A stretch of 64,000 bases of DNA, from IMG/VR virus record IMGVR_UViG_3300042350_004191, positions 62,001 to 126,000 of that record; one strand, 5' to 3'. The position numbers and the translations under genes are program-made. The notes below the pieces were generated by a model that searched no databases, was not told where the DNA came from, and worked only from the letters and a program-made list of their open reading frames with translations. Positions 19,177 to 50,933 of this stretch are shown piece after piece (position 1 is the first letter of the stretch; every line of letters starts with the position of its first letter).

Positions 19177-19205
19177 GATATATCTGAATAATTATATAGA
19201 ACTAA

Positions 19206-27136: not shown

Positions 27137-27182
27137 ACTTTATTGTTATACAAGTAATTCTTTATAATTATTATAAAGAACA

Positions 27183-29279
27183 ATGGCTACATTAATAACC
27201 AGTTCAGAATCACCAGAACCTAGATTATATATTTCTAGCTATTATGCCATTTTAGGTCAGTCAATTTTTTTCAAATTTGAAACTCCTAAACTTTTTAGAC
27301 AAAACATAATAAAAATTGTTTTAGATACTGGTGAAGAAAACCTATCTGAATCTGAAACTTCTAGATTAACATTAGACTTAGATCCTAACACTCCTATATT
27401 AGATAATTTAACTTACACTTATAAATCTACAGGGAAATATTTTATAAATTACACTGTAACATACCAATCTACAGTTAATAACAAAATTACAACTCAAACT
27501 TTCTTTATAGAAAATCCTATAACCGTTTTAAGAAATTGGCCGAGATTTAGACAACAAGATATAAGAATATTAGGAGAAAACATTCTTCGATTACCTTATA
27601 CTTTCGAACAAATACAGATAAATCCAAATGAATTTGGAACTAGCGGAGTTTATAATGCTTCATTAAGAAGACTGCACGAATGCTTGGAATATTTAAAATC
27701 AAATACTAGCATTTTAAATTCTAAAACTCCTTCTCTGTACTATGGTTGGTTTGGTTTAAATTCACTCGTAACATCAAATGGGTTTAGATGGCATACTCCA
27801 GATTATTTATCTGAATATTATAATAATGTTACCACTGGTTCTCATGGGTTTTCTGATATAAAAGACGTAGCAGAAACTAATAGTTTAATTTTTGTTTTAA
27901 ACAATAAAGATTTATCTATATATGTAAATTCTGAAAGACCTAGTAAATTATTTTTTAGAAACCAAGACGAACTATTAGAGACGTTAACTGACATAACTTC
28001 TTTCGATGTTACTACAGATGGAAGGCGAATGTTTATATTGGACGGTATTCAAAATAAAGTTTATAGGATAGATATAGATTTTGATGCAAATAATAGCATA
28101 TATCAAAGCTACAATCCAATCTTATCACTGACACATAACGTTGGTTCATATGGTGATGAAAGCGATCCTTTTACATTCAATAGTCCTACAAAAGTTTTAT
28201 GTATAAATGGTCTTGTTTATGTATTAGATTTTAATAACAAATGTATTAAAGTATATACTGAAAGATTAGAATGGGTTTATACTTATAATCCACCACAATT
28301 CCAAAATGATCAACCTATATCATTAGCTGTACAAAAAGACACTAATTTTGTTTATGTATTGACCAAAACAAAAGTATATGTTTTACCAAATCGTGTTAAT
28401 AGAGTAAATTCTACTTTTGATATAACAAATTTATCGAATTTGGAGCCTAAGACTATATTTTTTGATGAAGCTGGAGAGTTTTTTTATATTGTAACAAAAG
28501 AAAATGTATTTAAATACACCGCATTAGGTTTATACATGGATGTTTTAGACTTACCAAAAGGTTTTAATAATGAAAATTTAGAATTTATAACAGGAAAATC
28601 TGGAGTTAATAGAAACATTCTTTTAACAACTAAAACAGCAATCATAAAATGTCAAGAAGTAACAGAAATACTAACAACTGGACAAGGTTTAGATGTTGAT
28701 TATTGGTCTTTAAATCAAATTTTAATACAACCTGAAGAATTATCACAAGATTTTGTTATCAACAGAGCAATGTCTAGATTATGTTATAATTTAGTTAACT
28801 TTAGAAATTCTTTAGAGTCTAAACTAACTCTTTCAAGCGAATCAACAATAGCTGGTATCATAGAATATTTTAGACTATATCCTCTAAAAGCAGAATTAAG
28901 ACCAAAATTAGGCAATGACGTAGAAAGTAATAATGTAGCAGTTGGTGTAAATGAACTACACGTTCCTAGTGTTGTAAACCGCGAATTTAAAAAAATATAC
29001 GATGCTCTTTTGGTTATTAAGACTTTTTTGGATATAGAACCAGTACAAACTGAAAGTGAAATAGGTAGAAGTTTGAGTAGATGTCCTAATCTGTTTTGTT
29101 GGTCTTGGAAGGCTATGTCAACTTATGATGTTAAAAAGCCTATAATAAGGACATGTAATATCAATCCAATTACTTTTAGAGAATTGCAAGGCAAATTTTC
29201 AAATACAGATTATGTTCAGACAAAAACATGGGTCGAGGCTAGTAGTGAATGTTGTTACAATGTAAGAACCCCGATATAA
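27183..29279 (+). CDS. NHL/beta-propeller virion protein
   Basis: GSYG...FNSPTKV...VYVLDFNNKCIKVY NHL-like repeats, PKD-like N-terminus, Cys-containing C-terminus. Confidence 0.7.
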   Translation: MATLITSSESPEPRLYISSYYAILGQSIFFKFETPKLFRQNIIKIVLDTGEENLSESETSRLTLDLDPNTPILDNLTYTYKSTGKYFINYTVTYQSTVNNKITTQTFFIENPITVLRNWPRFRQQDIRILGENILRLPYTFEQIQINPNEFGTSGVYNASLRRLHECLEYLKSNTSILNSKTPSLYYGWFGLNSLVTSNGFRWHTPDYLSEYYNNVTTGSHGFSDIKDVAETNSLIFVLNNKDLSIYVNSERPSKLFFRNQDELLETLTDITSFDVTTDGRRMFILDGIQNKVYRIDIDFDANNSIYQSYNPILSLTHNVGSYGDESDPFTFNSPTKVLCINGLVYVLDFNNKCIKVYTERLEWVYTYNPPQFQNDQPISLAVQKDTNFVYVLTKTKVYVLPNRVNRVNSTFDITNLSNLEPKTIFFDEAGEFFYIVTKENVFKYTALGLYMDVLDLPKGFNNENLEFITGKSGVNRNILLTTKTAIIKCQEVTEILTTGQGLDVDYWSLNQILIQPEELSQDFVINRAMSRLCYNLVNFRNSLESKLTLSSESTIAGIIEYFRLYPLKAELRPKLGNDVESNNVAVGVNELHVPSVVNREFKKIYDALLVIKTFLDIEPVQTESEIGRSLSRCPNLFCWSWKAMSTYDVKKPIIRTCNINPITFRELQGKFSNTDYVQTKTWVEASSECCYNVRTPI

Positions 29280-30898: not shown

Positions 30899-33800
30899 AT
30901 GATTACTGTTTTTAATACAGCTTCTGCTTTTTTTTGGTATCCTGTGAAATTTAATTTTCAAGGAGGACAGGTGGAATCTTTGCATAGAAAGTACACCTTT
31001 AATAATGGTATGGTATTCAATGGTCATAACTTTTTATATCAAGCTATGGACTATGCAGATAATAATGATCAAACCATGTTTTTAACTGACATGTTATCAG
31101 CCAGTGAGCTTTTTACTATTAAAAGTAGACCACAAGAACAAAAGAATCTAATACAGATTATATCTACAATGACAGACTTTGAAGGATATATAGTAAAATA
31201 CGAAATTGAGAATATTCCAAATTTAACAAAAAAGAACAAATTAAAAAAAACAAACAGAACAACGCTATCAGATATAGATACTTTAAAATTTACGATAGAT
31301 GACACTGATGAAAATTATATTTTTATAGAAAATGATCAAGGACACGTTTTGACATGTGATTCTACGGGAGAAAATCAAACATATTTTACAACAAAAATAC
31401 AACCATACAACGATAAACAAAGATTTGAGTATTTTTTATCAGATAATGGTCAAATTAGCTTTTTCTTAGCAAATACGAATACAACTCTCGCATTAACAGT
31501 CTCGCCTTCTACAAGCAGTGTAATTTTAACTTCGGTAAACTTAAGTAATCAAATTTTTAGATTACCCAATCGTTTAATTTTTAATTTAAATTGTTATAAT
31601 AAAATTAACACACAACCAGATTATATTCCAAATAGTAAAATAGTAGAATATGAAAATAAACCAATAGACCCTATAGAAACTTTAAAAAAAGATGAAAATG
31701 TATTTAAAAACCAATATACACAAAATTATCTTTTCATGTTTCCTCCCAAAGCACCGAGAATTTTTGATGAAGAAGCTATTTTTGATGGTGAATTTTTAGG
31801 ATTAAAAAATTATCAAAATGCTGATTATGATTATGCTAAAGGTCCTTTTTTCATAGAAGATAATCCATATTTAAGAAGAATTTATTGGCAATTACACACA
31901 GGAACAAATCAAGAAGGTGGTTATGATAATATATATTTAAGCTATACTTCAAATAGTACTAAACTATTATTACAGCCTGATAGAGAAACGGAATTTCAAT
32001 TTTCACCAGTTTCTACTAGAATACCATTAACTGCGTCTAATTTAGTAGAATCCGGTGCTATTGCTGGAGAGCATCCCCTCACATCGGATAGAATATATGG
32101 TTTGGCTCAAAATTATAAAAACTCTTTACCAGCAACCTCACAGCCTGTCTCGTTTTTCCGAGAAACTGGTACTTGGTTGTGTTCTTGGTTAAAAGGAACG
32201 CAAAATGGTTCTAAAGTTTGGTATGATCGATATTATAATTCAGCTTATTATACTGCTGATGTAGCATTATCTTCACAATATTTAAATTACACTGATCGTT
32301 TAGACCCAACAAGACCTTATGTTTACGATGTTCCTACTACGCTAGTGTTAGAACCCGGTGCACGTTATAAATATTTCAGACAAGGCATACGAAGCTCGCA
32401 ACAGTTTTTACAATATCTAGATTTTACAAGCGAAACTAATTTAGGATCGAAGATTTTACACATAAATTCTTGGAATAATCCAAACGCAATTGATGTATCT
32501 CCATATAAAAATGACGGTATAATAATAAACCGAGGTATACAAAGAGACAGAAATTATCATGAATTTTATGGAAATGGACATATAATTTTTCCAGCAAAAT
32601 CAGATTTGTTAGAGACACAAAGAATAACGGTTTCTATGTGGTTATATGTAAAAGATTGGTCAGATATCGATGGTTGGCAAATATTCGGAAATTATTATAA
32701 TGGTGGTTGGGGTTTAATGAATGATGGTGGTCAAATAGCACCCTTATTAACTTTAACAGAAAACATAGACAAAAGAAGCTATACATTAAATTATAGACAA
32801 GGGTTGACAGATTCTTTTAGTTTATCATCATTTAAAAATTCATCTTTTGATTTTATAGTTAGATTACAAGATTATAACTATTGGTTAGTGGATACTTTTA
32901 ATATGAAAGTCTATAAGTTTGATAATAATGGAAAACTTATAGTAGATGATAGAAACCATCTAAGAGGTAGAATGGCTGGCGTAACTCAGGTAGAACTAGA
33001 TAGTAATTTTAACTTATATATTTATAATGGAAATCAAGGACAATTATTAGTACTAAATCAACTGGGGCAACTAGTTTCTTTCCAAGAAGGTTTACCTTAT
33101 GATAGAATAGATATCCGTTCCGATAATAAACTTGTATTGTGTGAATCAAATATCGGAATAATTGATAATGATGATAATTTATGGGAAATTGTCGGTGAAA
33201 GTTTATATAAACTAACAAATTACAACCAAAGTTTAAAACAATATACAAATAAAAATATAAAAGCGACTGTAGGTAAATGTCAAAACATTGCATGTGATAG
33301 TGAAAATAATCTTTGGTTTGTAACAAAGGATAATTTTTTAATTAAGTTTAATACTAAAACTGAAAGATTTGAATATAACAAAAAATTATTGGACGATGCT
33401 GTTGATTATTGTGATCCAAATCAACCACAATATTCTACAATAGGTATACTCAGAACACCTGCTCCTGATTTTTATAATGATTGCCCAGAACTAAAGAAAA
33501 AATTGTATGATATTATTACGGTTGTTGATAATGTTAATTTTAAAATTTATTATTTCCAAACAACAGGTCAATTAATTAAAAGAATAGATTTAAGGTCATA
33601 TATTTTAAATGAAGATGTAAGATTTAATGATAACTGGAAATTTAAATCATATGGTGATTTTACAGGATTTAATTTTATAAGAAAATTTGGAAAATCTACA
33701 AACAAAACAATTAGTTGGAAAATAGCTATAGCAGATCCACTTTTAACAGATTTTAGATATTTAACCTTAAGTTATAATGTTTCTTCTTTACCTAATGGTT

Positions 33801-34348
33801 GGCATAATTTTACTATGTCTTTCAATAATAGCCAAGGACCGTTTGGTGGAAATGCACAGGGTAGATTTGAGTATTATTTAGACTCGATTAAAGTTGGTAG
33901 TGTCGGTACACCTAAAGATTATAATATATTTTATGATTATACTTCACCTTTATTATTAGGAGCAACAACAATAAAAAATACAAGCTTAAATGATTTAGTT
34001 AAAATAGAAGACAATTATAAATTTATCGGAAGAGCTTCTGATCTTAGGATTTATAATAAATCTTTGAATTCTAGTGAAATAGAACAATTATACTTTGCAA
34101 ACCAATATTCTTTAAATAGAGGACCTTTAAATTGGAATATAATAATAGGAGAAAGAGATTACATAGAAAAAATAAACCACTTTTTCAAATACAAATTACC
34201 GGGTAGTAAAACTAATTACTATAACATAAATATACATAACTTTAATGTATCAAGGGAAATTAAAAATATCATAGAAAAAGCTATTAGAGATAATATCTAT
34301 AAAATTTCACCATATAACACGTATTTAAATAGAATTAATTGGATATGA
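30899..34348 (+). CDS. Large virion protein with LamG-like and beta-propeller domains
   Basis: ITVSMWLYVKDW and GWHNFTMSF...YYLD...F.GR.SDLRIYNKSL...EI LamG halves flank propeller repeats (IACDSENNLWF). Confidence 0.7.
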   Translation: MITVFNTASAFFWYPVKFNFQGGQVESLHRKYTFNNGMVFNGHNFLYQAMDYADNNDQTMFLTDMLSASELFTIKSRPQEQKNLIQIISTMTDFEGYIVKYEIENIPNLTKKNKLKKTNRTTLSDIDTLKFTIDDTDENYIFIENDQGHVLTCDSTGENQTYFTTKIQPYNDKQRFEYFLSDNGQISFFLANTNTTLALTVSPSTSSVILTSVNLSNQIFRLPNRLIFNLNCYNKINTQPDYIPNSKIVEYENKPIDPIETLKKDENVFKNQYTQNYLFMFPPKAPRIFDEEAIFDGEFLGLKNYQNADYDYAKGPFFIEDNPYLRRIYWQLHTGTNQEGGYDNIYLSYTSNSTKLLLQPDRETEFQFSPVSTRIPLTASNLVESGAIAGEHPLTSDRIYGLAQNYKNSLPATSQPVSFFRETGTWLCSWLKGTQNGSKVWYDRYYNSAYYTADVALSSQYLNYTDRLDPTRPYVYDVPTTLVLEPGARYKYFRQGIRSSQQFLQYLDFTSETNLGSKILHINSWNNPNAIDVSPYKNDGIIINRGIQRDRNYHEFYGNGHIIFPAKSDLLETQRITVSMWLYVKDWSDIDGWQIFGNYYNGGWGLMNDGGQIAPLLTLTENIDKRSYTLNYRQGLTDSFSLSSFKNSSFDFIVRLQDYNYWLVDTFNMKVYKFDNNGKLIVDDRNHLRGRMAGVTQVELDSNFNLYIYNGNQGQLLVLNQLGQLVSFQEGLPYDRIDIRSDNKLVLCESNIGIIDNDDNLWEIVGESLYKLTNYNQSLKQYTNKNIKATVGKCQNIACDSENNLWFVTKDNFLIKFNTKTERFEYNKKLLDDAVDYCDPNQPQYSTIGILRTPAPDFYNDCPELKKKLYDIITVVDNVNFKIYYFQTTGQLIKRIDLRSYILNEDVRFNDNWKFKSYGDFTGFNFIRKFGKSTNKTISWKIAIADPLLTDFRYLTLSYNVSSLPNGWHNFTMSFNNSQGPFGGNAQGRFEYYLDSIKVGSVGTPKDYNIFYDYTSPLLLGATTIKNTSLNDLVKIEDNYKFIGRASDLRIYNKSLNSSEIEQLYFANQYSLNRGPLNWNIIIGERDYIEKINHFFKYKLPGSKTNYYNINIHNFNVSREIKNIIEKAIRDNIYKISPYNTYLNRINWI

Positions 34349-35232
34349 GCAACTTCGACTTATTAAACAGACAATGTGATGATGTTATTTTAATATCAGA
34401 TAACTTTTGTCTTGATAAATCTTTTGAAATACTCGTAAAAAATTTTGAGTTTTTTGAAGACAAATTAAATTCAATTAATAAACAAGATGACAGAGTTGCT
34501 ATATTAAAAGATAGATACGATAAAAATAAACAAAAATATTATAAGCTTATAACTTTTGTAAACCAATTCAGCGCAAGTTTAGAAAACGTACATACAGTTT
34601 TTAACAGACAAAGGGATATATGGCAAACAAAAAACACACCTTTAGAAATTATTTATAATGAAATTATACCTATAACAAGGTGGGGGTTTTTTAATACAAG
34701 TAATGGAGAAATTACTAGAAACAACAACATTATTGCCTCTATAAAAAAACAAATAATAGATTGGGTTAATCAAACTTTTATAGAAGAACAATATGGTATA
34801 TATGAAAATCTTAAAGTAAAAATTTATTTAAGTGCTGACATTACCGACACATTTACCTTTAATGGCAGATATGACGAAACTTGTGATGCTGGTGGTGGTT
34901 CTAAAACTGTATGCTGTAATCCGTGTGGGGATCCTGGTAGACCCTCCAGAGGATGTAATAGAATGGGTGTTATATATGTTGATGGTAGAAGGTTTCAAGG
35001 TCCCGGTGGTTGTGGTAATTTAGGATCTTGGTGTCCAGCAGCAGTACACGATACTACTTGTGCTACAGGCACATGTAAGGGTTGGGGTGGAGGATATAGC
35101 CCCAATGCATGGAAATCTCATCGTTTAAAGGTTTCGAGGACTATACAATATAATGATAGATATTTAATAGGACATGATACTTTAAATCTAATAATGGATA
35201 AAACAAATTTTCTTTGGAAAGAAAATATTTAA
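34345..35232 (+). CDS. Coiled-coil virion protein with 9-Cys insert (paralogue family member 1)
   Basis: ATG at 34345 overlaps the upstream stop (ATGA); aligns by eye with 35236..36114 and 36975..38441. Confidence 0.65.
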   Translation: MSNFDLLNRQCDDVILISDNFCLDKSFEILVKNFEFFEDKLNSINKQDDRVAILKDRYDKNKQKYYKLITFVNQFSASLENVHTVFNRQRDIWQTKNTPLEIIYNEIIPITRWGFFNTSNGEITRNNNIIASIKKQIIDWVNQTFIEEQYGIYENLKVKIYLSADITDTFTFNGRYDETCDAGGGSKTVCCNPCGDPGRPSRGCNRMGVIYVDGRRFQGPGGCGNLGSWCPAAVHDTTCATGTCKGWGGGYSPNAWKSHRLKVSRTIQYNDRYLIGHDTLNLIMDKTNFLWKENI

Positions 35233-35235
35233 AAT

Positions 35236-36114
35236 ATGAAAAATATATCATTAAATCTTCCAAACGCATCTGATAATATCGGTGATTCTATTAATAAATT
35301 AAATAACATTTTTAATAATCTAAAAGGTTATATTGATGATTTAAATGATGTAAAAGGTGTATCTGAAAATTTTCAAGATTCTGTGAATGTCTGGTTAGGT
35401 GAATTACAATATAGCCTAGACTTCATGAATAAGAATAATAAGAAATATTTAAATCTTTTTGAAGAAGTTTTAAATAAAACAGATCTGTTGGTTAAACCTT
35501 TAATATTATTCTATCCTACAAAAATAAGGTCTGATGTTGCGGCATATGACAGATTATATACACAAAATCTCATTCATGATTGGATCAGTAAATACTATCC
35601 AATAAAAACACCAAATATAGAAAAGCCTAACTATGTTGAAGGTCAAAAGGCTGTAATTTATTTTTTAAGAAATGAAGAAATAAAAGCAGAAAGAAATGAA
35701 AATCAAAGTGATTTGATTCAATGTTTTACACAAGATAGACCCTTATATGTTGCCTGTGTTACGAGAAGAACTGGACAGGTCTGTGTACCAGGTTGTGGTT
35801 GTGTAGGATGTGCTGGACAAACATATTGTTCAAATTCGGCTTTTTTAGATTGTTATTTTCCTGATGGGGGTATTAGGAGAAATACTGTTTTAAGATATTT
35901 GGCATTATATATGAAATATACATATGAAGATTTTTCTGAAAAAAGATTCGATATTGTAAGATTTATAGTTGATGAGTGTGAATGGAAAATTGATAATACC
36001 CCTATAATTAGTACACCTAAAACTCCACCAAAAAATATAGAAAACGGTATTGAGACTTTTGTTGTAAAAGATCAAATACAAACTTTTACGAAAGATGATA
36101 TAGATCCGTTTTAA
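35236..36114 (+). CDS. Coiled-coil virion protein with 8-Cys insert (paralogue family member 2)
   Basis: DNIGDSINKLNNIFNNL N-terminus, PLILFYP, DWI.K.YP, Cys-rich insert. Confidence 0.65.
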   Translation: MKNISLNLPNASDNIGDSINKLNNIFNNLKGYIDDLNDVKGVSENFQDSVNVWLGELQYSLDFMNKNNKKYLNLFEEVLNKTDLLVKPLILFYPTKIRSDVAAYDRLYTQNLIHDWISKYYPIKTPNIEKPNYVEGQKAVIYFLRNEEIKAERNENQSDLIQCFTQDRPLYVACVTRRTGQVCVPGCGCVGCAGQTYCSNSAFLDCYFPDGGIRRNTVLRYLALYMKYTYEDFSEKRFDIVRFIVDECEWKIDNTPIISTPKTPPKNIENGIETFVVKDQIQTFTKDDIDPF

Positions 36115-36140
36115 AACAATTAAAAAGATAAATAATTAAT

Positions 36141-36962
36141 ATGCCTGTAAATTTTAACAATTTTTCTGACGGTGGTAGTAATATAGCACTTAATTCTTTT
36201 TTTGTTGGTTTTGATAGTACTCAAACGGGTGGTGAAAAAAAGTGGTCTTGGATCAATTTAAGAAGAGCAATAAGAGCACTTGTAGCTTCTTCTACTTATG
36301 TAGGAGTTGAAACAGTTATAGGTTGTACACAGACAGGTCTTGGTTACTTTAGTAAGGACACTCTAGCAATAGGTGCTTATAATCCAACACCAAGTGATTC
36401 GCGTTATTTGGCAGATTTTAACTGGCAAAAACAAAACGGAACTCAAGAAGTTCAAAGAATGGAAGCTACTGCTATAGCCACCTATAAGCCTTGGCAAAGT
36501 TTCTTCCCCTATAAACCAGAAAGTGGTTTAGCTGGTATAGATTTTCCCAATTACGCGATTAGTTCAACTAAAATGCAAGTACAACAAGGCACCATGGATA
36601 GCAGTACTAGCAATGAAAACATGAGATATACTCTTTATGTGGATTGGCAAAGAAGAAGAGCTTTTATAACTGGTATGTATATGTTGGCTAGTGGTAGTTA
36701 TAATACTGCGGTGTTTAATAGGGGTTGGACTTTTAATAATGATACAGGACCACAATCAATTCAAACAGATGGGTTTGGTGGAAATGTTTTAGGAGAAAGA
36801 AATATTATTAATGCTTATTATGCTAGTGGAGGTCAGGGTCCTTACATAGTTCATGTTAATAATGGAGGTATACATGCATTGCCTGTTTGGAATTTTGCTC
36901 CCGCTTTTAATGAAACAAGCAATGTTTCTATTTTTATAGAAAATACATATCTAGGTTCATAA
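36141..36962 (+). CDS. Putative fibre tip/receptor-binding protein
   Basis: N-terminal MPVNFNNF...FFVGFD...GEKK module; GATAAATA at 36127-36134. Confidence 0.5.
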   Translation: MPVNFNNFSDGGSNIALNSFFVGFDSTQTGGEKKWSWINLRRAIRALVASSTYVGVETVIGCTQTGLGYFSKDTLAIGAYNPTPSDSRYLADFNWQKQNGTQEVQRMEATAIATYKPWQSFFPYKPESGLAGIDFPNYAISSTKMQVQQGTMDSSTSNENMRYTLYVDWQRRRAFITGMYMLASGSYNTAVFNRGWTFNNDTGPQSIQTDGFGGNVLGERNIINAYYASGGQGPYIVHVNNGGIHALPVWNFAPAFNETSNVSIFIENTYLGS

Positions 36963-36974
36963 AAAATTTTTCCA

Positions 36975-38441
36975 ATGGAAGATAATTTATTAAGTTTAGA
37001 ATTAGATGATAATGTAGGTGATGGATTAGCAAAAATAAACTATAACCTTCTAAATATCAATCAAGAATGTTGTACGATAGATTCTTTTTATAAAGAAAAT
37101 ACTAGGTTTCTAAATGATTTAGAAAACTTAATGGACAGAATAGATGTGCTTTTACCTGATGTAAATTATGACTTTTTAGAAAAATTAGAAGCTACTGTAC
37201 AGGTTTTGAGTGGTTATTGGAATAATTTAGAAATGTCTGTACAGTACCCATTCAACCCTATTAATGGATATGTCAGTTCTATTGTTGCTGCTGGAGAATT
37301 AGGTTCTCTTGTTTCACGCACTACACAAAATGAACAGATTGATTTAATTGCTGATACATTGGTTAAACAGGGAGTTTATTCGTCAAGGTTTGAAGCTAAA
37401 GAAGGATTCGATGATTTAGATATGGTTATAGTTTTTCGAGACGATAATGGAAATTTTACTTATTGGCAGTATCTTTATAAAAGTCTTATTTTAAATTTTA
37501 CTGTAGATAATCAAAATAATTTATACTATAACGAAAGATTGGTAGACATATATAGATTACCTTATTTTAGTGTAATTGCACCTAGAAATATAGATCTTTC
37601 AATTCAGGGAACAACTGTGGATTTTAATGATAAAGTTATTTATGTTGGGAATAACATAATACAGGCCAGTAGAGAGACTTTAAATAATTCATTTATTCAA
37701 TATACAACAGTAACAAGAAGACAATTATCTCAAACAGAAGAAACCTTGGATGTGACAACGTACACTCCTACAATAAAAAATTTAAGTGAAATAATTCCAG
37801 TTAATAATCCAACATATAAAGCAAAAATTAAAAAATTTAATGATGATGTATTAGAAAGTGTATTACAAAATCCTTTATTGAACACTATATCTTTAAGGTT
37901 TTTAAATAAATCTTATGCACCGAATAAATTTACGGATGGAAACATAATTAATGTAGTATTTTTCTTATATAATACAATAGGTTTGAATACTTCAAAAGCA
38001 AACATAGCAACGTCTTATTATGGTTTAGATGTTACTACTCCGAGAAATAATGCTAAAGTTAGGACTTTTCAAAATGAAATAACCGAAGTCGCACCATCGT
38101 CAAATACAACATTTTCTGTAAATTTTTCAAAAACCGATGTTTATGTTGAAAGAATTGTTCTTGTAAAATATAAAAAAGTTTCTAAAGTAGAATTTATAAC
38201 AAACGAAAGTACGGGAAAAGTTACCCCTAGAACTATACACTATTGGGAATTTGTTAATGCAAACATAGGTCCCAAATATAGAAAAGGTAACAGAACCAAA
38301 GTTAATGTAGATAATGCTCCTGTTTATGTAAGAAGAGCACCTACAGTATCTGAAATTAAGTTATTCCCAACTCAAATCATAACCCAAACTGGGGATATCC
38401 TAAATGATAGAAAAGGAAATACTTTCTTAATAGAAACTTGA
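36975..38441 (+). CDS. Coiled-coil virion protein (paralogue family member 3)
   Basis: DDNVGDGLAKINYNLLNI, SVQYP, FLNKSYAP..F.DG.IINVVFFL; ends IITQTGDILNDRKGNTFLIET. Confidence 0.65.
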   Translation: MEDNLLSLELDDNVGDGLAKINYNLLNINQECCTIDSFYKENTRFLNDLENLMDRIDVLLPDVNYDFLEKLEATVQVLSGYWNNLEMSVQYPFNPINGYVSSIVAAGELGSLVSRTTQNEQIDLIADTLVKQGVYSSRFEAKEGFDDLDMVIVFRDDNGNFTYWQYLYKSLILNFTVDNQNNLYYNERLVDIYRLPYFSVIAPRNIDLSIQGTTVDFNDKVIYVGNNIIQASRETLNNSFIQYTTVTRRQLSQTEETLDVTTYTPTIKNLSEIIPVNNPTYKAKIKKFNDDVLESVLQNPLLNTISLRFLNKSYAPNKFTDGNIINVVFFLYNTIGLNTSKANIATSYYGLDVTTPRNNAKVRTFQNEITEVAPSSNTTFSVNFSKTDVYVERIVLVKYKKVSKVEFITNESTGKVTPRTIHYWEFVNANIGPKYRKGNRTKVNVDNAPVYVRRAPTVSEIKLFPTQIITQTGDILNDRKGNTFLIET

Positions 38442-38456: not shown

Positions 38457-38464
38457 TATAAATA
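38457..38464 (+). promoter_or_regulatory. Perfect T4 late promoter TATAAATA
   Basis: Exact consensus, only 5 nt before the ATG at 38470. Confidence 0.7.
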
Positions 38465-38469: not shown

Positions 38470-39066
38470 ATGGCTAATGTAACTTTTAATGACCTTCCTA
38501 ACAGAACAACCGTAGGAAATAATGATTTTTTTGTCATTAATAGTTCTGACAGAACTGTTTTGCCCGAAGGTAAAGTAGGATTTAATGTATTAAAAAATGC
38601 AATACAAAGTAATACATTAACATCAAATTATTTTAGAAGTACTACTAATAATGTACAAGTAAAAACTGCTGCTACAGGTGATAATTTAATTACTATCAAT
38701 GATTCAGGAAGATTATTCACTTTTCCTAAAAGAAATAGTAATGCATATGGAATATTTCAGTTAAGTTGTAAAAGAACAGGGCCTGTTGCGTTAACAAATG
38801 TATTAGCATTTTTTAATCTAAAATGGTATAATAGAAGTACACAAACAACTAATGCGGTTGGCTTACTTGGTAGTTTAGATCCATTAAGTTTACCTATAAA
38901 TAACGGTTCAGGTTCACCCTCTAGCTCCACTATTCACAATACATTTTTAAGTATTCCTGTTGGTGACGGTATAGGATATATGCAATTAGAAGTAAGTTTT
39001 TCTTTAAATTTACCAAATGCAAGGGCTGTAGTCGAAACTAGCAGTTGGTTATTTCAAACAACATAA
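38470..39066 (+). CDS. Short fibre/tip protein
   Basis: MANVTFNDLP...NDFFVIN...EGKV N-terminal module; followed by a tail-fibre chaperone. Confidence 0.55.
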   Translation: MANVTFNDLPNRTTVGNNDFFVINSSDRTVLPEGKVGFNVLKNAIQSNTLTSNYFRSTTNNVQVKTAATGDNLITINDSGRLFTFPKRNSNAYGIFQLSCKRTGPVALTNVLAFFNLKWYNRSTQTTNAVGLLGSLDPLSLPINNGSGSPSSSTIHNTFLSIPVGDGIGYMQLEVSFSLNLPNARAVVETSSWLFQTT

Positions 39067-39071
39067 ATATT

Positions 39072-39290
39072 ATGGCAAATCTATCATGGGCAAGCGTACA
39101 AGAAGCAAGAAATTATTTGCTTAAGCAATCTGATTGGACACAATTATTAGACGTTCCTTTATCAGAAGAAGAAAAAGAAAAGTGGGTTACATATAGACAA
39201 GAACTCCGTGATATTACCAAAACTTTCAGAGCACCGGAGCAGGTTATTTGGCCTGTACCACCAGACCTACAAAGTCTAAATGAATCCTAA
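39072..39290 (+). CDS. Phage tail fibre assembly chaperone
   Basis: RNYLLKQSDWTQLLDVPL...W..YRQELRDIT...WPVPP is the classic tail-assembly-chaperone motif; start moved to ATG 39072. Confidence 0.88.
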   Translation: MANLSWASVQEARNYLLKQSDWTQLLDVPLSEEEKEKWVTYRQELRDITKTFRAPEQVIWPVPPDLQSLNES

Positions 39291-39744
39291 TCCATTTTTA
39301 CAATATAGACATGCTTTAGGTTTAGGCGATCTTGTAGCATGTACTTTACATTCTAAATATTTAAATCCAATAACAACATTTGTAACTGGAAAAGATGGAA
39401 TGTGCATGGCTTGTGATGCTAGAAGACAAGCATTAAATATTTTATTTCCAATACCAATGTGGAAATTATTTTTTGATTCTAAAGAAGAACAAGAAAAGAG
39501 TATTCAAAAATATATAGTGTATGAAGATGTTCCTAAAGAAAAGCCATCAGAAGAAATAATAAATAACATTAAACAAAATGAAGTACAAAAACAAATCACA
39601 GAAGAGTTTATTGAAGAACCTATAATAGAAAAAATTAAAAATGTGCCTAATAACGAAGAAATAGAAGACTATAGGTTCTTAAATTCTTCAGATGTTCATC
39701 TAGATAATTATATAGTAAGAACTACCGTTTATAGAAAAATATGA
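39280..39744 (+). CDS. Hypothetical protein with GLGD...CxxC..RRQALN motif
   Basis: GLGDLVACTLH...CMACDARRQALN, a possible metal-binding motif. Confidence 0.6.
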   Translation: MNPNPFLQYRHALGLGDLVACTLHSKYLNPITTFVTGKDGMCMACDARRQALNILFPIPMWKLFFDSKEEQEKSIQKYIVYEDVPKEKPSEEIINNIKQNEVQKQITEEFIEEPIIEKIKNVPNNEEIEDYRFLNSSDVHLDNYIVRTTVYRKI

Positions 39745-40211
39745 ATATACAGCCAAATACATTTATAACCCAACCTATGACAAGTACATTAGATGGTACG
39801 CGAAAATTTGGTTTATTTTTAAATAAAATTTTAGCTGGTATAAAGATGTTTCATTGGTATTCTTTAAATTACAATTTTCATACTGTAACAGATGATTTAC
39901 ATAAAGGTTTATCAAAACTAGTTGATACATTAATCGAGGAGCTTATTGAAGTAGTCCGGTCACAAAACATACCTTTTGAATTGAATTTACCAGAAATTCA
40001 AAATTTTGAAAACTGTCAAACATACCAACCAGAACTCCAAAGTTTTTCATCAAAATATAATGAAATTTCTTATGCGCTTTTACAAGTATTAAACTCCCCA
40101 GAATTTACGGATTTTACTCAAAAAAGTATATCGGGTATTAATAATGTAAAAGAAGAAATTGTATCTCTCTTAAACAAAACATCTTATCTTTTAAATCAAA
40201 TTAGAGAATAA
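39741..40211 (+). CDS. Ferritin/Dps-like four-helix protein (DUF5856-like)
   Basis: IKMFHW.....FH...DDL...L..LVD.LIE...INNVKEEI...LNKTSYLL. Confidence 0.7.
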   Translation: MNIQPNTFITQPMTSTLDGTRKFGLFLNKILAGIKMFHWYSLNYNFHTVTDDLHKGLSKLVDTLIEELIEVVRSQNIPFELNLPEIQNFENCQTYQPELQSFSSKYNEISYALLQVLNSPEFTDFTQKSISGINNVKEEIVSLLNKTSYLLNQIRE

Positions 40212-40246: not shown

Positions 40247-41140
40247 ATGGAAAAAGTAGCCATAATACGTCCCGGTGCAATTGGAGATGTATTAATGTCT
40301 TTTAATTTTTTAAAACAATTAAAAGAAAAATACGAAGTTCATTATTTCTGTCATTCGTCCATCCATTCAGTATTAAAAAGCTTTGTAAAAAATAACAACT
40401 TACTGGATCATTTTTATATATTAGAAAATTATAATTCAGAAAATTTTTTAAAAACCATAAACCTAGTAGCTTATCCCTTGCATGAAGGATATCCTCATAA
40501 AAAAATGCAAAATCATTTATTATATTATTTTGCAAAAGAAATGGATGTAAATTTTACCTTTGATGATTTTGAATTAGATTTACCACCTTTACCTAAAAAA
40601 ATAAAAAACCAAAATTATCCTCGATATATTACGTTTCAAAACAAAACAGGATGGTCTGTCTATAAAGAATGGTGGGGTTGGCAGCAGTTAGTTGATATGA
40701 TTAAAACAAATTATCCAGAAATTGAAATATATCAGATAGGTGGTCCAAATGATCCACAAATCAATAATATAGATGGTTCGTTTTGTGGTGATACTTTTGA
40801 AGATAATTTAGCAGCACAAGCATGGTCCATTGGTCATATTGGTTTAGATTCTGTATTCGAGGTAACAACAAACATCCAATGGAGAAATAAAGGAAGAAAT
40901 AAAGGAATAATACTATTTGGGTCTACCCAACATGACGCAACCGGATATCCTTTTAACACTAATATATGTTTAAATTTACCGTGTCAGCCGTGTTTTAGAG
41001 AAGATCCTAAGATAAGTCAGATGTCATTAGGGTCTTGTATAAATCCACCAAATCAAGAATATGATAATCCAAAACATGCTTGTATGATAGGAATTACGCC
41101 TGAAATGGTTTATCTAAACACCTTGAAATTGTTCAGTTAG
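40247..41140 (+). CDS. GT-B glycosyltransferase, GT9 (heptosyltransferase)-like
   Basis: RPGAIGDVLM, IYQIGG, HIGLDS, IILFGST, CQPCF...C...CM..ITPEMV. Confidence 0.82.
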   Translation: MEKVAIIRPGAIGDVLMSFNFLKQLKEKYEVHYFCHSSIHSVLKSFVKNNNLLDHFYILENYNSENFLKTINLVAYPLHEGYPHKKMQNHLLYYFAKEMDVNFTFDDFELDLPPLPKKIKNQNYPRYITFQNKTGWSVYKEWWGWQQLVDMIKTNYPEIEIYQIGGPNDPQINNIDGSFCGDTFEDNLAAQAWSIGHIGLDSVFEVTTNIQWRNKGRNKGIILFGSTQHDATGYPFNTNICLNLPCQPCFREDPKISQMSLGSCINPPNQEYDNPKHACMIGITPEMVYLNTLKLFS

Positions 41141-41151
41141 TATATTAGTAT
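41123..41151 (+). promoter_or_regulatory. sigma70-like promoter
   Basis: TTGAAA-17 nt-TAGTAT, 5 nt before the ATG at 41157. Confidence 0.45.
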
Positions 41152-41156
41152 ATAGT

Positions 41157-41786
41157 ATGAATATTAATAACTATCATGTTGATGACTTTGGGGTTATTCA
41201 TCAAAAAAAAATTTACCCAATAACATATGATAAAAAATATGTAAAGGAACGATACGACACTTATGGTGAAAAAGTTCGTCAAATGTCTTTTTTGCGTCTG
41301 GGTTATTTGTTAGGTGCTATAAATAAAACTCCTAAATCAATACTTGATGTTGGTTATGGAAATGGTGATTTTTTAAAAACTTGTGCATCTATCATCCCCG
41401 AATGCTTTGGAAATGATGTTACAGGTTATCCTTTACCTGAAAATATTAAGTTTATTGAAAATATTTTTGAAAACTATTATGAAGTAATATCTTTTTTTGA
41501 TGTTTTGGAACATTTTGAAAATATCAACATCATTCAACATTTAAAATGTGACTATATCATTATATCCGTTCCTTGGTGTTACGATTATGAAAATAAAGAA
41601 TGGTTTTTAAATTGGAAACATTTAAGACCAAATGAACATCTTCATCATTTTAACGAAAAATCTCTTATTAAGTTTTTTGAACATAATTCATTTCAATGTG
41701 TTTGTTATAGCAATGTTGAAGATGCTATTAGGAAAGATCCTAACAATAAAAAAAATATTTTAACTGCTGTCTTTAAAAAGATATAG
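41157..41786 (+). CDS. Class I SAM-dependent methyltransferase
   Basis: SILDVGYGNGDFL, FFDVLEHF, IISVP, EHLHHF..KSL. Confidence 0.88.
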   Translation: MNINNYHVDDFGVIHQKKIYPITYDKKYVKERYDTYGEKVRQMSFLRLGYLLGAINKTPKSILDVGYGNGDFLKTCASIIPECFGNDVTGYPLPENIKFIENIFENYYEVISFFDVLEHFENINIIQHLKCDYIIISVPWCYDYENKEWFLNWKHLRPNEHLHHFNEKSLIKFFEHNSFQCVCYSNVEDAIRKDPNNKKNILTAVFKKI

Positions 41787-41789
41787 TTT

Positions 41790-43661
41790 ATGAAAAAAGT
41801 AGGGACTGTATTATTAATAACTCGTTATGGTGGTTTGGGTGATCTCATAATGATGCTTCCGACCATCAAGGCTCTAAAAGAAAAACATAATAATTGTAAA
41901 ATAGTTCTTCGAACATACAAGGATTATGAAAATTTCATAAAAGAATCCCCATTAATTGATCAAGTAGTATTAGATGATAATGGCTATAATCTGTTTACTA
42001 CACACGAAGGAGTTTTTTCTTTAAAAGAAGATAACGCTTTTGCAAGTAAAGATCAAAAAGTCATTCATTACAATTTCCAAGGAGTTATAGAAAACCGTAA
42101 AGACGTTCATGGTGTAATTGCGTTTGCAGAACATGCTAAAGTAAATGTTGTTTTTGATGGAAGTTATGAAAAAAACCTTTTGAATTGGTATGATAGAAAT
42201 AGCGAAAGTCCGTCAATTGTGGTTCAATTAAGAAACGTGGGAGATGGGAGAGATTTAACTATAAAGGATTTACCTTACGAAGAACTTTTAAAAAATAATG
42301 CATATTTTATAGATAAAATTATACCAGATAAAGATTATTTGAACCTAATTGCAAATAGTAAAATTTTTGTTGGTACAAATTCTTCAGGTTTACCTATTGC
42401 TGCCGCAACTCATGTGCCTTGTATGTTTATTTTGTTTAATGAAGAATTTCCTCCTTCAATACGAAGTTACAATGGAGTTTATAATTATACAAATACAAAG
42501 GAACTATCCGCCGATTTATCAAAATATCTTTTAAAAGATTGTCATTACAAGAAGATTGGGTTGTCGATGATAGTTAAAAATGAATCCAGAGTCATTAAAA
42601 GATGTTTGGATAGTGTAAAACCATTGGTTGATTATGTTTGTATATCAGATACGGGTTCAACAGATAATACAATCGAAATAATTGAACAATGGTTAAAAGA
42701 AAACAGTATAAAAGGTGAAGTAAATCGAGAAAAATGGGAAAATTTTGCCTCTAATAGAAGTAAATCATTAGAAAATCTCAGAAAACATAAAGACATTGAC
42801 TATACATTGGTTATAGATGCAGATGAGATATTAAAATTTGATGATAATTTCGATTATTTTAAATTTAAAACTAGTTTAACAGCGGATTTATATAATATTA
42901 CTTGTAAATTTGGTAGTATTGAATATGCAAGGACAAATTTATTCAAAAATTCCAAAAATTTTTATTATAAATGTGTTTTACACGAATATCTGGAATGTTA
43001 TGAGCCTATTTTAAGTCGAGACACTGCAAAAGGCGTATATAATATCCCAATTCAAGATTCTGCCCGAAATACAGATGTTCAAAAATATCAAAATGATGCT
43101 AAATTATTAGAGGAAGCATTAAAAACGGAAAAAGATCCTTATTTAATTCAAAGATATACCTTTTATCTTGCTCAATCGTATAAAGATTGTGAGCAAAATG
43201 GTAAAGCGATCTATTGGTATAACAAAAGAGCCGAATTAGGTGGTTGGGATCAAGAAGTATATTGGTCTTTGTATCAGGTAGCTCGATTAAAAGAAATCAT
43301 GGGCTATCCCGAAGATGATATTGTCCAAAGTTATCTTCGTGCTTATGAAAAATGTACTTCCAGAATCGAAGCATTGCATAATGCTATTAAATTTTGCAGA
43401 ACACATGGTAGAGATCATCAAGCATATATGATTGGAAAATATGCCAAATCATTACCAGTTGATAAAACTGGACTATTTGTAGAAACTTGGATGATAGATT
43501 ATGCTTTAGATGATGAATTTTCTATTGCCTGTTATTGGTCAGGTCACTATGCAGAGGGATTAAAGGTTTCTGAAGAATTAATCAACAAAATACCAGAAGA
43601 TCAAAAACCTAGAATACAACAAAATATACAATTCTTTAAAGAAAAATTACTCGTAAAATGA
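41790..43661 (+). CDS. Fusion of GT9-like domain, GT2 glycosyltransferase and TPR repeats
   Basis: N-terminal RYGGLGDLIMMLP and FVGTNSSG; then LSMIVKNE..I.RCL.SV, DTGSTDNT, NF..NR, IDADE, LHEY; then FYLAQSYKD and related TPR helices. Confidence 0.88.
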   Translation: MKKVGTVLLITRYGGLGDLIMMLPTIKALKEKHNNCKIVLRTYKDYENFIKESPLIDQVVLDDNGYNLFTTHEGVFSLKEDNAFASKDQKVIHYNFQGVIENRKDVHGVIAFAEHAKVNVVFDGSYEKNLLNWYDRNSESPSIVVQLRNVGDGRDLTIKDLPYEELLKNNAYFIDKIIPDKDYLNLIANSKIFVGTNSSGLPIAAATHVPCMFILFNEEFPPSIRSYNGVYNYTNTKELSADLSKYLLKDCHYKKIGLSMIVKNESRVIKRCLDSVKPLVDYVCISDTGSTDNTIEIIEQWLKENSIKGEVNREKWENFASNRSKSLENLRKHKDIDYTLVIDADEILKFDDNFDYFKFKTSLTADLYNITCKFGSIEYARTNLFKNSKNFYYKCVLHEYLECYEPILSRDTAKGVYNIPIQDSARNTDVQKYQNDAKLLEEALKTEKDPYLIQRYTFYLAQSYKDCEQNGKAIYWYNKRAELGGWDQEVYWSLYQVARLKEIMGYPEDDIVQSYLRAYEKCTSRIEALHNAIKFCRTHGRDHQAYMIGKYAKSLPVDKTGLFVETWMIDYALDDEFSIACYWSGHYAEGLKVSEELINKIPEDQKPRIQQNIQFFKEKLLVK

Positions 43662-43857: not shown

Positions 43858-45925
<2,068 letters not shown>

Positions 45926-45945
45926 TAAATATTTATCATTTTTTC

Positions 45946-46284: not shown

Positions 46285-46286
46285 AA

Positions 46287-48213: not shown

Positions 48214-50933
<2,720 letters not shown>

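What the first reader, a model, noticed from the sequence alone, without database searches (positions are those of the whole stretch)
34345..38441. Paralogue family with swappable Cys-rich knobs on a predicted beta-ribbon stalk
Three genes share an N-terminal anchor (D.[IV]GD...K[LI]N-like), a coiled coil, a P/S-x-x-x-Y-[PN] motif, and a D/R-W/F-[IVL]-N/S..Y/F..[VI].[IF]Y/FL core. At the equivalent position, between long beta-strand-like arms, member 1 has a 9-Cys Gly-rich insert (34882-35076), member 2 has a different 8-Cys insert (35722-35853), and member 3 has a Cys-free insert. Inference: a stalk-and-knob display scaffold, loosely like ultralong bovine CDR-H3, whose variable disulphide- or metal-stapled knob may bind receptors. 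This Cys density is unusual for a protein assembled in the cytoplasm.
Basis: partly seen in the sequence, partly recalled or inferred. Interest (0 to 1): 0.65.

Follow-up and report, generated by a model that had tools for sequence, protein, structure and literature searches.

The report
Paralogous phage proteins with cysteine knobs
Three neighbouring genes in the tail-baseplate region of an uncultured lake-water T4-like phage are ancient copies of one previously undescribed protein: two copies carry their own strictly conserved cysteine-rich tip and the third carries a variable, cysteine-free tip, so the gene family is real, but the cysteine tips are fixed parts rather than swappable binding loops.

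Summary
M1 (34345-35232), M2 (35236-36114) and M3 (36975-38441) are paralogues. Pairwise BLAST and shallow profiles show nothing. Deep profiles give M1-M2 Prob 99.3%, E 1e-20 over 236 columns. M2 and M1 match compact M3 relatives at 97.5% and 96.3%. Reversed-profile controls give E >= 0.02.

AlphaFold2 gives M1 a confident core with two long strands (155-178, 259-285) flanking a low-confidence Cys tip. The M2 model failed.

Each Cys tip is a conserved module of its own orthologue family. In 90 diverse M2 relatives seven Cys are 84-98% conserved and tip length is fixed (median 44). Extra Cys appear only as strict pairs. The M1 and M2 tips are not detectably alike.

Variability sits in M3, in its tip and its C-terminal add-ons.

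The order LamG giant, M1, M2, M3 is kept in all 15 relatives' loci examined. There is no Pfam, PHROG, PDB or GenBank-phage relative.

Best reading: a new family of peripheral baseplate or fibre-adaptor virion proteins. M1 and M2 would be conserved adaptors with Cys-stapled tips, and M3 the host-specific member. The virion role is inferred, not shown.

The parts
30899..34348 (+). Upstream 1149-aa gene with a C-terminal LamG/ConA-like domain. Its stop overlaps the M1 start codon. It is always the gene immediately before M1 in relatives.
   Evidence: Pfam Laminin_G_3 E 3.8e-5. A gene of about 1100-1180 aa, with LamG hits in most, precedes M1 in L002, L004, L008, L009, L012, L014-L016 and L018-L021.
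34345..35232 (+). M1, 295 aa: paralogue 1
   Evidence: Seven orthologues at 38-86% identity, plus syntenic ones. M1deep vs M2deep: Prob 99.3%, E 1e-20.
34345..34635 (+). M1 N-terminal helical domain (aa 1-97). It holds the invariant C11 and C22 and the motif C-L-D-K-S-F-x-I-L-x-x-N-F.
   Evidence: AF2 helices 23-42, 47-60 and 62-97. Aligns to the M2 N-terminal domain at Prob 96.8%, E 2.6e-10. Invariant columns.
34639..34881 (+). M1 core (aa 99-179): P-x4-Y-N strand, small alpha/beta unit, W140 helix, then the long strand called arm 1 (155-178).
   Evidence: AF2 pLDDT blocks 79-91. Core vs M2 core: Prob 96.7%, E 3.3e-10.
34882..35076 (+). M1 Cys-rich tip (aa 180-244), 9 Cys. C180, C204, C230 and C244 are invariant. 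C191, C194 and C223 are 86-95% conserved. C190 and C239 occur in 62-67% of members.
   Evidence: AF2 pLDDT < 50. Pairwise identity 0.42, the highest of the M1 segments.
35119..35223 (+). M1 arm 2 (aa 259-293): a long strand pairing with arm 1, ending at the invariant W291.
   Evidence: AF2 strands 259-285 and 290-293, pLDDT about 85. Weak collinear match to the M2 C-terminal arm, E 9e-4 against 0.18 for the reversed control.
35236..36114 (+). M2, 292 aa: paralogue 2. It starts 3 nt after the M1 stop.
   Evidence: 93 cluster representatives at E <= 1e-3 among 1.84 billion proteins.
35272..35313 (+). M2 N-terminal motif D-N-I-G-D-S-I-N-K-L-N-N-I-F (aa 13-26). I15 is 92%, G16 86% and N23 92% conserved across the family.
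   Evidence: The strict motif D.[IV]GD...K[LI]N occurs only in M2 and M3 among the 650 ORFs of the genome.
35497..35673 (+). M2 P-x4-Y-P strand and core (aa 88-146). P88 is 96%, Y93 90%, P94 89%, W116 87% and Q137 94% conserved. Includes the V-I-Y-F-L strand.
35722..35853 (+). M2 Cys-rich tip (aa 163-206), 8 Cys. Family-wide core Cys are 163, 174, 187, 192, 198 and 206. C183 and C189 form a clade-specific pair.
   Evidence: Segment length median 44, IQR 43-45. The pairs 171+201 (32 of 32) and 183+189 (14 of 14) always co-occur.
35854..35991 (+). M2 C-terminal arm (aa 207-252) ending in C248-x-W250 (96% and 98% conserved).
36141..36962 (+). 273-aa gene lying between M2 and M3. It is not a family member and is a lineage-specific insertion.
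   Evidence: No Pfam or PHROG hit. Absent at this position in most relatives. L012 has a 168-aa relative judged by its N-terminus.
36975..38441 (+). M3, 488 aa: paralogue 3, without a Cys-rich tip.
   Evidence: 22 homologues.
36975..37259 (+). M3 N-terminal helical domain through Y-P-F-N-P (aa 1-95). Holds the motif D-N-V-G-D-G-L-A-K-I-N-Y-N.
   Evidence: M2deep vs M3: Prob 96.3%, E 1.9e-9, 93 columns.
37260..37874 (+). M3 clade-specific inserted block (aa 96-300), absent from compact M3 orthologues.
   Evidence: No match to M1 or M2.
37878..37982 (+). M3 core helix and arm 1 (aa 302-336): L-R-F-L-N-K-S-Y...V-V-F-F-L-Y-N.
   Evidence: The compact L014 M3 core hits this segment at Prob 86.6%, E 4.4e-6. 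The same L014 protein aligns with M2 residues 13-152 at Prob 87.5%.
37983..38123 (+). M3 Cys-free tip (aa 337-383), the least conserved and length-variable part.
   Evidence: Pairwise identity 0.35 against 0.59-0.61 for its flanks; length 49-77. About 25-75 aa in compact M3s.
38124..38438 (+). M3 arm 2 (aa 384-430, invariant W424) and C-terminal tail (431-488).
   Evidence: Equivalence with the M1 and M2 arm 2 rests on pattern and collinearity only.

Best explanation
M1, M2 and M3 are ancient paralogues of one previously undescribed protein family. They are encoded as a tightly packed block at the end of the baseplate gene module of a 211-kb T4-like myovirus from lake water.

Each protein has the same build: an N-terminal helical domain of about 90 aa opening with a D-x-[SG]-[LIF]-x-x-[IL]-N-x-N-[FY] motif; a P-x4-Y-[PN] strand; a small alpha/beta core with a W/F helix; and a long two-stranded beta arm whose distal tip is the site of divergence.

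M1 and M2 each carry their own conserved, Cys-framed mini-domain at the tip. M3 carries a Cys-free tip of variable length. In different phages M3 also carries different C-terminal add-ons.

Inferred function: all three are virion proteins at the baseplate periphery or at the fibre attachment site. M1 and M2 would be conserved adaptors whose tips are rigidified by disulfides (formed in or after release into oxic water) and/or bound metal, and would serve as fixed docking or contact modules. M3 would be the host-specific, exchangeable member.

The three may co-assemble through the shared helical domain and arms, but support for this is weak.

Shown: paralogy, architecture, conservation pattern, synteny. 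Inferred: virion location, redox or metal state, docking role, oligomeric state.
For: Paralogy: with reversed-profile controls.

Structure: AF2 gives M1 a confident core and a long hairpin.

Conservation of the tips. Extra Cys are gained only as strict pairs, which is a disulfide-like signature. The family-wide core Cys spacing lacks paired CxxC knuckles.

Context: gp23 capsid protein at 7825-9261 and gp6-like wedge protein at 13127-14935 lie upstream. Collagen-repeat fibre genes lie downstream.

Synteny: the order LamG giant, M1, M2, M3 is kept in all 15 relatives' loci examined. Genes overlap or sit 1-4 nt apart in several.

Fibre-type add-ons in relatives:
- Gly_rich_2 on the M3 of L015 and on the M2-family member P0049 (E 9e-18).
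- A PT-rich linker on the L014 M3.
- A module shared with a Gly_rich_2 protein, inserted in the L014 M1 tip.
- M3 length ranges from 226 to 930 aa.

Precedent: functional disulfides and cysteine-rich docking regions occur in the baseplate of freshwater cyanophage Pam3 (PMC9942802).

Complex prediction for M1+M2: weak support. ipSAE was 0.50 (runs 0.20, 0.50, 0.51) against a best control of 0.00. The mark was reached by 58 of 80 solved complexes and 2 of 110 mismatched pairs. At 0.60 or under, however, it was reached by only 7 of those 80 and by both mismatches. Runs agree in at least 16% of contacts and the partner pLDDT is at least 56.
Against: There is no direct evidence that any of the three proteins is in the virion: no proteomics and no RNA run.

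There is no match to any known baseplate or fibre family. Pfam, PHROGs, PDB sequence searches, BFVD and PDB fold searches were all negative. T4_gp9_10_N is absent from the genome.

The M2 model failed (pLDDT 38.5), and the M1 tip is unmodelled. The stalk and knob therefore rest on one medium-quality monomer model.

The conserved Cys count is odd in both families, and total Cys is even in only 52 of 90 M2 members. An all-disulfide tip is therefore not established.

Co-occurrence of Cys pairs is inflated by shared ancestry.

The complex score is in the weak band, and close paralogues can pass such a test without binding each other.
Confidence: 0.55

Rival explanations
1. One reading: the Cys knobs are the receptor-binding, diversity-bearing elements, displayed on a stalk like the knob of an ultralong bovine CDR-H3.
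For: The M1 hairpin and tip topology. Non-Cys positions of the M2 tip are more variable than the scaffold, 0.18 against 0.24-0.30. The tip accepts a large foreign domain in L014. The M1 and M2 tips are not alike.
Against: The Cys framework and tip length are conserved across 90 M2 representatives and 20 M1 sequences. The M1 tip is its most conserved segment. Receptor-binding tips of phages normally vary fastest, and here that behaviour is shown by M3. Four lake runs carry the stretch with zero differences.
Confidence: 0.15
2. The Cys-rich tips are covalent docking platforms. Their cysteines would form intermolecular disulfides with other tail components, for example the conserved N-terminal Cys of M1 or M3, or fibres. 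This is what the cysteine-rich wedge regions of cyanophage Pam3 do.
For: Pam3: fibres are linked to cysteine-rich wedge loops by disulfides, and DTT detaches the fibres (PMC9942802). The number of conserved Cys is odd in both tips. Invariant Cys lie in the N-terminal helical domains of M1 (C11, C22) and M3 (C33). High conservation fits an interface.
Against: There is no sequence relation to Pam3 proteins in the PDB searches. Extra Cys come in intramolecular-looking pairs. No structure is available to show proximity.
Confidence: 0.2
3. The tips are metal-binding modules (Zn or Fe) that fold in the reducing cytoplasm, and no disulfides are involved.
For: The proteins are made in the cytoplasm. 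No Erv1/ALR-type sulfhydryl oxidase was detected in the genome. Distant M1 orthologues have G-C-N-H-H-G with added His. The window's M2 has C-x-C-x-x-C. There is a very weak profile match to the Zn2Cys6 protein PUT3 (E 0.16).
Against: The family-wide core Cys spacings lack the paired CxxC knuckles of common zinc modules. The His residues are not conserved. The strict pairwise gain and loss of extra Cys is more typical of cystines.
Confidence: 0.2
4. The three are not virion components. They would be assembly chaperones or intracellular factors that happen to be encoded in the tail module.
For: No known structural domain was detected. The N-terminal helical bundle resembles many non-structural proteins only generically.
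Against: Strict synteny inside the baseplate and fibre module. Fusions to Gly_rich_2 domains, PT-rich linkers and fibre-type modules in orthologues.
Confidence: 0.1
5. The similarity is chance or compositional, and the three genes are unrelated.
For: BLASTP, shallow hhalign and hmmsearch were all non-significant.
Against: Deep profile comparisons give E 1e-20 to 2e-9 against 0.02-0.7 for reversed controls. They are significant separately for the helical and the core parts, with the Cys segment excluded.
Confidence: 0.02

Closest known systems
Cysteine-rich wedge regions and disulfide-linked fibres of freshwater cyanophage Pam3 (PMC9942802)
   Same: An aquatic myovirus with Cys-rich segments in baseplate-periphery proteins. 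[quoted passage not shown] It shows that functional disulfides occur in a virion assembled in the cytoplasm.
   Different: No detectable sequence relation. The Pam3 Cys regions are loops of the wedge proteins gp22 and gp23, not tips of a hairpin in a three-paralogue set. Disulfides are not demonstrated here.
T4 gp9 / gp10 (Pfam T4_gp9_10_N), trimeric baseplate proteins that attach fibres
   Same: Similar size (gp9 is 288 aa, from my own knowledge). Similar position at the end of the baseplate gene block. By my recollection, a G-D...K-I-N-x-N-F-like N-terminal motif, which is a lead and not a test.
   Different: PF07880 finds nothing in the genome or in the proteins. gp9 and gp10 have no Cys-rich tip.
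Ultralong bovine antibody CDR-H3 (beta-ribbon stalk plus disulfide-rich knob)
   Same: Shape only: a long two-stranded arm with a small Cys-rich tip (M1 model).
   Different: Unrelated origin. The antibody knobs are hypervariable in sequence and in Cys pattern, whereas the M1 and M2 tips have fixed frameworks and lengths.
Glycine-rich adhesin-type domains of phage fibres (Pfam Gly_rich_2; Pam3 gp24 and Salmonella phage S16 gp38, as described in PMC9942802)
   Same: Some M3 orthologues (L015; L020 judged by its sequence) and the M2-family member P0049 end in such a domain. This links the family to fibres.
   Different: The window's own M1, M2 and M3 have no such domain.

Membership tests
T4 gp9/gp10 family (Pfam PF07880 T4_gp9_10_N) | Match to the PF07880 profile at or above its cut-off of 25 bits | tested here: not met
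   No hit for M1, M2 or M3 at E <= 0.1. No hit in six frames of the whole 210.6-kb genome at E <= 10.
T4 gp9/gp10 family | Homotrimer with an N-terminal coiled coil that docks on the wedge protein | not testable with these tools
   Only a hetero-pair prediction was run, and its support was weak. There is no virion structure.
PHROG 20658 ('head decoration') | Family-wide match to the PHROG profile | tested here: not met
   Only 1 of 66 M2-family members matches (E 2.4e-4, 54 residues) and 0 of 16 M3 members do.
Disulfide-rich mini-domains (knottin-like Cys frameworks) | Conserved Cys framework, with Cys gained and lost in pairs | tested here: met
   M2: 6 tip Cys plus C248 are 84-98% conserved. 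The pairs 171+201 (32/32) and 183+189 (14/14) co-occur strictly. M1: C190 and C239 occur in 62-67% of members.
Disulfide-rich mini-domains | Even number of Cys, all oxidised; known knot topology | tested here: inconclusive
   The conserved count is odd. Total Cys is even in 52 of 90 members. The tip is not modelled (pLDDT < 50). Oxidation state cannot be tested in silico.
Zinc-binding modules (zinc ribbon, treble clef, Zn2Cys6) | Paired CxxC/CxxH knuckles, or a match to a known Zn-domain profile | tested here: not met
   No Pfam Zn domain. The family-wide core Cys spacing has at most one CxxC, in M1. The PUT3 match is E 0.16.
Phage fibres with a Gly-rich domain (Pfam PF21722 Gly_rich_2) | Match to PF21722 | tested here: not met
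   The window's M1-M3 have no hit. The domain is present only in relatives: P0049 (E 9e-18) and the L015 M3.
The M1/M2/M3 paralogue family itself (undescribed) | N-terminal D-x-[SG]-[LIF]..[IL]N.N[FY] helical domain, P-x4-Y-[PN], W/F helix with Y.[ED]G and a V.[VI][YF][FL] strand, and a C-terminal arm ending in W | tested here: met
   Profile-profile alignments pair these elements in all three. For the C-terminal arm the evidence is weak (E 9e-4), and for M3 it rests on pattern only.

The most novel reading that the evidence does not exclude
M1, M2 and M3 assemble 1:1:1 through their homologous helical domains and beta arms into one heteromeric stalk at the baseplate periphery. That stalk would present three different tips side by side: two ancient, fixed Cys-framework knobs and one fast-evolving, exchangeable tip that also accepts whole domains. 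This would be a natural modular display scaffold of a fold not yet seen in any solved structure.
Probability: 0.12. Interest if true: 0.75.

Novelty: new variant of a known kind. Interest (0 to 1): 0.55.

Why it matters
T4-like phages outside the enterobacterial group lack recognisable gp9-gp12 homologues. How their fibres are attached, and how host specificity is encoded, is therefore largely unknown.

This work defines a widespread family: 93 clusters at 50% identity for M2 alone. All members are unnamed and none occurs in a GenBank phage record. The family sits where those functions are expected.

The family separates cleanly into two conserved members and one variable member. That gives a concrete target for host-range studies in uncultured freshwater phages.

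The conserved Cys frameworks in a protein made in the cytoplasm add a second candidate case, after Pam3, for redox- or metal-dependent tail architecture in aquatic phages.

The result also shows that a motif-level reading of raw sequence detected a real homology that BLAST and shallow profiles missed.

Tried and rejected
- BLASTP between the three proteins gave nothing.
- hhalign with 8-16-sequence profiles gave Prob <= 7.6%.
- hmmsearch of each profile against all 650 ORFs of the genome: M3 came only third for the M2 profile, at E 0.14.
- Pfam and PHROGs on the proteins and on family members gave no supported family.
- PADLOC and NCBIfam were not tried.
- blastn of the stretch and tblastn of M1, M2, M3 and two remote M2 relatives against 50,697 phage records found no match.
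- PDB sequence searches with four profiles and one protein found only designed helical bundles and noise.
- The ESM Atlas look-alike search gave no usable hit.
- AlphaFold2 of M2 with 10 sequences failed (pLDDT 38.5).
- Fold searches with the M1 model found nothing: BFVD, PDB by Foldseek, and 48,161 PDB representatives by VIA-align gave no match at E <= 0.001 or Z >= 5. The core was barely tested, because the helical part filled the lists.
- MAFFT placed the compact L014 M3 core against the wrong part of the window-type M3. This was corrected by a separate hhalign.
- A direct comparison of window M3 residues 96-488 with the C-terminal halves of M1 and M2 was not significant (E 0.08-0.19). Its best local hits did fall on the predicted core segment.
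- The T4 late-promoter core TATAAATA is not enriched in the window (13 found, 18 expected).
- The sigma-70 and terminator scans were uninformative.
- Laying four lake runs on the stretch showed zero differences, so it gave no information on population variability.
- P0004 against the 198-aa downstream gene: a guessed N-terminal likeness was not supported by BLAST.
- Pfam did not detect a Hint domain in the L004 M3 C-terminus.
- No other genetic code was used.

Full report
**What the window is**

The window is bases 62001-126000 of a 210,586-bp virus record judged 99% complete. It encodes a gp23-type major capsid protein (7825-9261; Pfam Gp23, E 5e-90) and a gp6-like baseplate wedge protein (13127-14935; phrog_219, E 4e-39). 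After these come very large unannotated genes, and then collagen-repeat fibre genes on the other strand.

The capsid protein is only about 34% identical to that of any GenBank phage. The 4.1-kb stretch occurs in lake-water metagenomes. Four runs from different studies carry it without a single difference. The phage is therefore an uncultured, deep-branching T4-like myovirus from fresh water, with about 30% G+C.

**The observation**

The three genes are M1 (34345-35232, 295 aa), M2 (35236-36114, 292 aa) and M3 (36975-38441, 488 aa).
- The M1 start codon overlaps the stop of an upstream 1149-aa gene with a LamG domain.
- M2 starts 3 nt after the M1 stop.
- An unrelated 273-aa gene (36141-36962) lies between M2 and M3.

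Segment 34882-35076 is M1 residues 180-244 with 9 Cys. Segment 35722-35853 is M2 residues 163-206 with 8 Cys.

In a proteome with 1.0% Cys, M1 and M2 rank first and second of 196 gene-like ORFs for Cys density. The binomial chance is about 2e-8 per window over about 6e4 windows.

**Homology**

Simple tests failed:
- BLASTP gave E >= 0.035.
- hhalign of 8-16-sequence orthologue alignments gave Prob <= 7.6%.
- hmmsearch inside the genome gave E 0.14 at best.

I then deepened the profiles in two ways.
- **By synteny.** IMG/VR and metagenome loci L002-L021 all carry the block LamG giant (about 1100-1180 aa), M1-like, M2-like, M3-like.
- **By exhaustive search.** An HMM search with the M2 profile found 93 cluster representatives at E <= 1e-3, 50 of them at <= 1e-10.

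With these profiles the results were:

| Comparison | Prob | E-value | Columns |
|---|---|---|---|
| M1 vs M2 | 99.3% | 1e-20 | 236 |
| M2 vs seven compact M3 orthologues | 97.5% | 7e-12 | 141 |
| M1 vs the same M3 set | 96.3% | 2e-9 | 141 |
| M2 vs window-type M3 (N-terminus to YPFNP) | 96.3% | 1.9e-9 | 93 |
| All reversed-profile controls | <= 2.7% | 0.02-0.7 | - |

Split by parts, M1 against M2 gives:
- N-terminal helical domain: 96.8%, E 2.6e-10.
- Core: 96.7%, E 3.3e-10.
- C-terminal arm: E 9e-4, against 0.18 for the reversed control.
- Cys segments alone: E 0.16, the same as the reversed control.

The signal is therefore not a Cys-composition artefact. The tips themselves are not detectably alike.

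For the window's M3 the core helix and strand lie at residues 302-336. This is shown through a bridge. The compact M3 of L014 (315 aa) aligns with M2 residues 13-152 (87.5%, E 3.6e-6), and its core aligns with window-type M3 residues 302-336 (86.6%, E 4.4e-6). Residues 96-300 of the window M3 are thus a clade-specific inserted block.

**Structure**

AlphaFold2 with 10 sequences gave M1 a mean pLDDT of 58.5:
- a confident core (blocks 79-91 for residues 101-170 and 271-295);
- helices at 23-97;
- two very long strands, 155-178 and 259-285, which bracket the Cys segment;
- the Cys segment (178-251) itself below pLDDT 50.

This fits the 'arms plus tip' picture for M1, but it rests on one monomer model.

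M2 failed (pLDDT 38.5).

No solved or predicted viral structure resembles the M1 model. No PDB sequence matches any of the profiles.

**Are the knobs variable?**

No. Across 90 M2-family sequences that are mostly under 50% identical to one another:
- Cys 163, 174, 187, 192, 198, 206 and 248 are present in 84-98%.
- Tip length has median 44 and IQR 43-45.
- Pairwise identity of the tip (0.29-0.30) equals that of the scaffold.
- Non-Cys positions are somewhat more variable, 0.18 against 0.24-0.30.
- Additional Cys occur only as strict pairs: 171+201 in 32 of 32 carriers and 183+189 in 14 of 14, never together.

That pairing is the pattern expected for cystines, although shared ancestry inflates its significance.

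In M1 (20 sequences) the Cys segment is the most conserved part (0.42; non-Cys 0.34). Seven core Cys are conserved, and C190 and C239 occur in 62-67% of members.

M3 behaves differently:
- Its tip (337-383) is the least conserved part (0.35 against about 0.6 for its flanks).
- The tip varies from 49 to 77 aa within the clade and from about 25 to 75 aa among compact M3s.
- The protein as a whole ranges from 226 to 930 aa.
- Its C-terminal add-ons differ between phages: Gly_rich_2, a PT-rich linker, and a K/E-rich linker followed by an extra domain.

One M1 orthologue (L014, 627 aa) has about 370 residues inserted inside its Cys tip. These include a module that is 27% identical (E 2e-10) to part of the neighbouring 1258-aa Gly_rich_2 protein. 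The tip is therefore a permissive site and probably exposed.

**What it most likely is**

The following all point to virion proteins of the baseplate periphery or the fibre attachment zone:
- the position at the end of the baseplate block;
- the strict synteny with a LamG giant;
- the near-abutting reading frames;
- the fibre-type fusions in orthologues.

In this reading M1 and M2 are conserved adaptors and M3 is the host-specific member.

The conserved Cys tips fit rigid docking or contact modules better than diversity-bearing receptor loops. Cyanophage Pam3 offers a precedent. In Pam3, cysteine-rich wedge regions hold fibres by disulfides, and reduction detaches them (PMC9942802).

Whether the tips hold cystines, metal or both is open:
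- The family-wide core Cys spacings lack paired CxxC knuckles.
- No sulfhydryl oxidase was detected in the genome.
- The conserved Cys count is odd.

A complex prediction for M1+M2 gave weak support only. ipSAE was 0.50 (runs 0.20, 0.50, 0.51) against a best control of 0.00. The mark was reached by 58 of 80 solved complexes and 2 of 110 mismatches. At 0.60 or under, however, it was reached by only 7 of those 80 and by both mismatches. Runs agree in at least 16% of contacts and the partner pLDDT is at least 56. Paralogues can also pass such a test without binding each other.

**Comparison with the known**

The family has:
- no Pfam family;
- no PHROG family;
- no named member;
- no member in GenBank phages.

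It is not a member of T4 gp9/gp10. My recollection of a similar N-terminal motif there is a lead only.

The bovine CDR-H3 analogy holds for shape only.

**Verdict**

The shared scaffold with different tips is real. The claim of swappable or variable receptor knobs is not.
- This is an undescribed family within a known kind of system (phage tail accessory proteins), with an unusual conserved Cys-framework tip.
- Interest is 0.55.

Noticed in passing
window 36141-36962: A 273-aa gene with no family match sits between M2 and M3. It is absent at this position in most relatives. L012:6038-6544 holds a 168-aa relative judged by its N-terminus. It looks like a lineage-specific insertion into the conserved block.
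   Followed up: partly
L004:6816-9608: The M3 orthologue here is 930 aa. The family part is followed by about 330 aa of K/E-rich low-complexity sequence, a poly-Gly run, and a domain of about 130 aa beginning CFVSGTTV. That domain looks Hint-like by eye, but Pfam gives only a sub-threshold AXH hit.
   Followed up: partly
L014:4322-6205 and L014:7936-11712: The M1 orthologue (627 aa) has about 370 aa inserted inside its Cys-rich tip. About 110 aa of the insert is 27% identical (E 2e-10) to a module of the adjacent 1258-aa protein, which has two Gly_rich_2 regions, long PT repeats and 28 Cys.
   Followed up: yes
window 38457-38464: TATAAATA, the core of T4 late promoters, lies in the 28-nt gap between the M3 stop and the next gene (38470). 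Another copy lies at 60736, just before the gene at 60755. The overall count in the window is not above chance (13 against 18 expected).
   Followed up: partly
window 38470-40211 and relatives: The genes after M3 (198 aa, 81 aa, 154 aa with a G-L-G-D...C...C-x-x-C motif, and 156 aa matching DUF5856 below its cut-off) are also conserved in order in relatives. In distant relatives a 1800-2040-aa VWA-domain gene follows on the opposite strand, where this phage has glycosyltransferase and collagen-repeat genes.
   Followed up: partly
window 40247-43661: A methyltransferase (Methyltransf_23) and a 623-aa protein with a family-2 glycosyltransferase domain lie inside the structural region. This may hint at modification of virion proteins or of host surface glycans.
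   Followed up: no
window 43858-50927 (minus strand): Three genes with collagen triple-helix repeats (687, 489 and 412 aa) match tail-fibre PHROGs strongly. They are the recognisable fibres of this phage.
   Followed up: partly
window 14941-29279: Four very large genes after the gp6-like gene (1411, 1686, 957 and 698 aa). The 1411-, 957- and 698-aa genes have no Pfam or PHROG match. The 1686-aa gene has no Pfam match and was not scanned against PHROGs. The baseplate of this lineage is largely uncharted.
   Followed up: no
whole record (G000) and runs X1-X6: The phage is from lake water, and the same 4.1-kb sequence is found without differences in runs of several studies. Its capsid protein is only about 34% identical to any GenBank phage. 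The host is unknown; the low G+C (about 30%) suggests a low-GC freshwater bacterium.
   Followed up: partly
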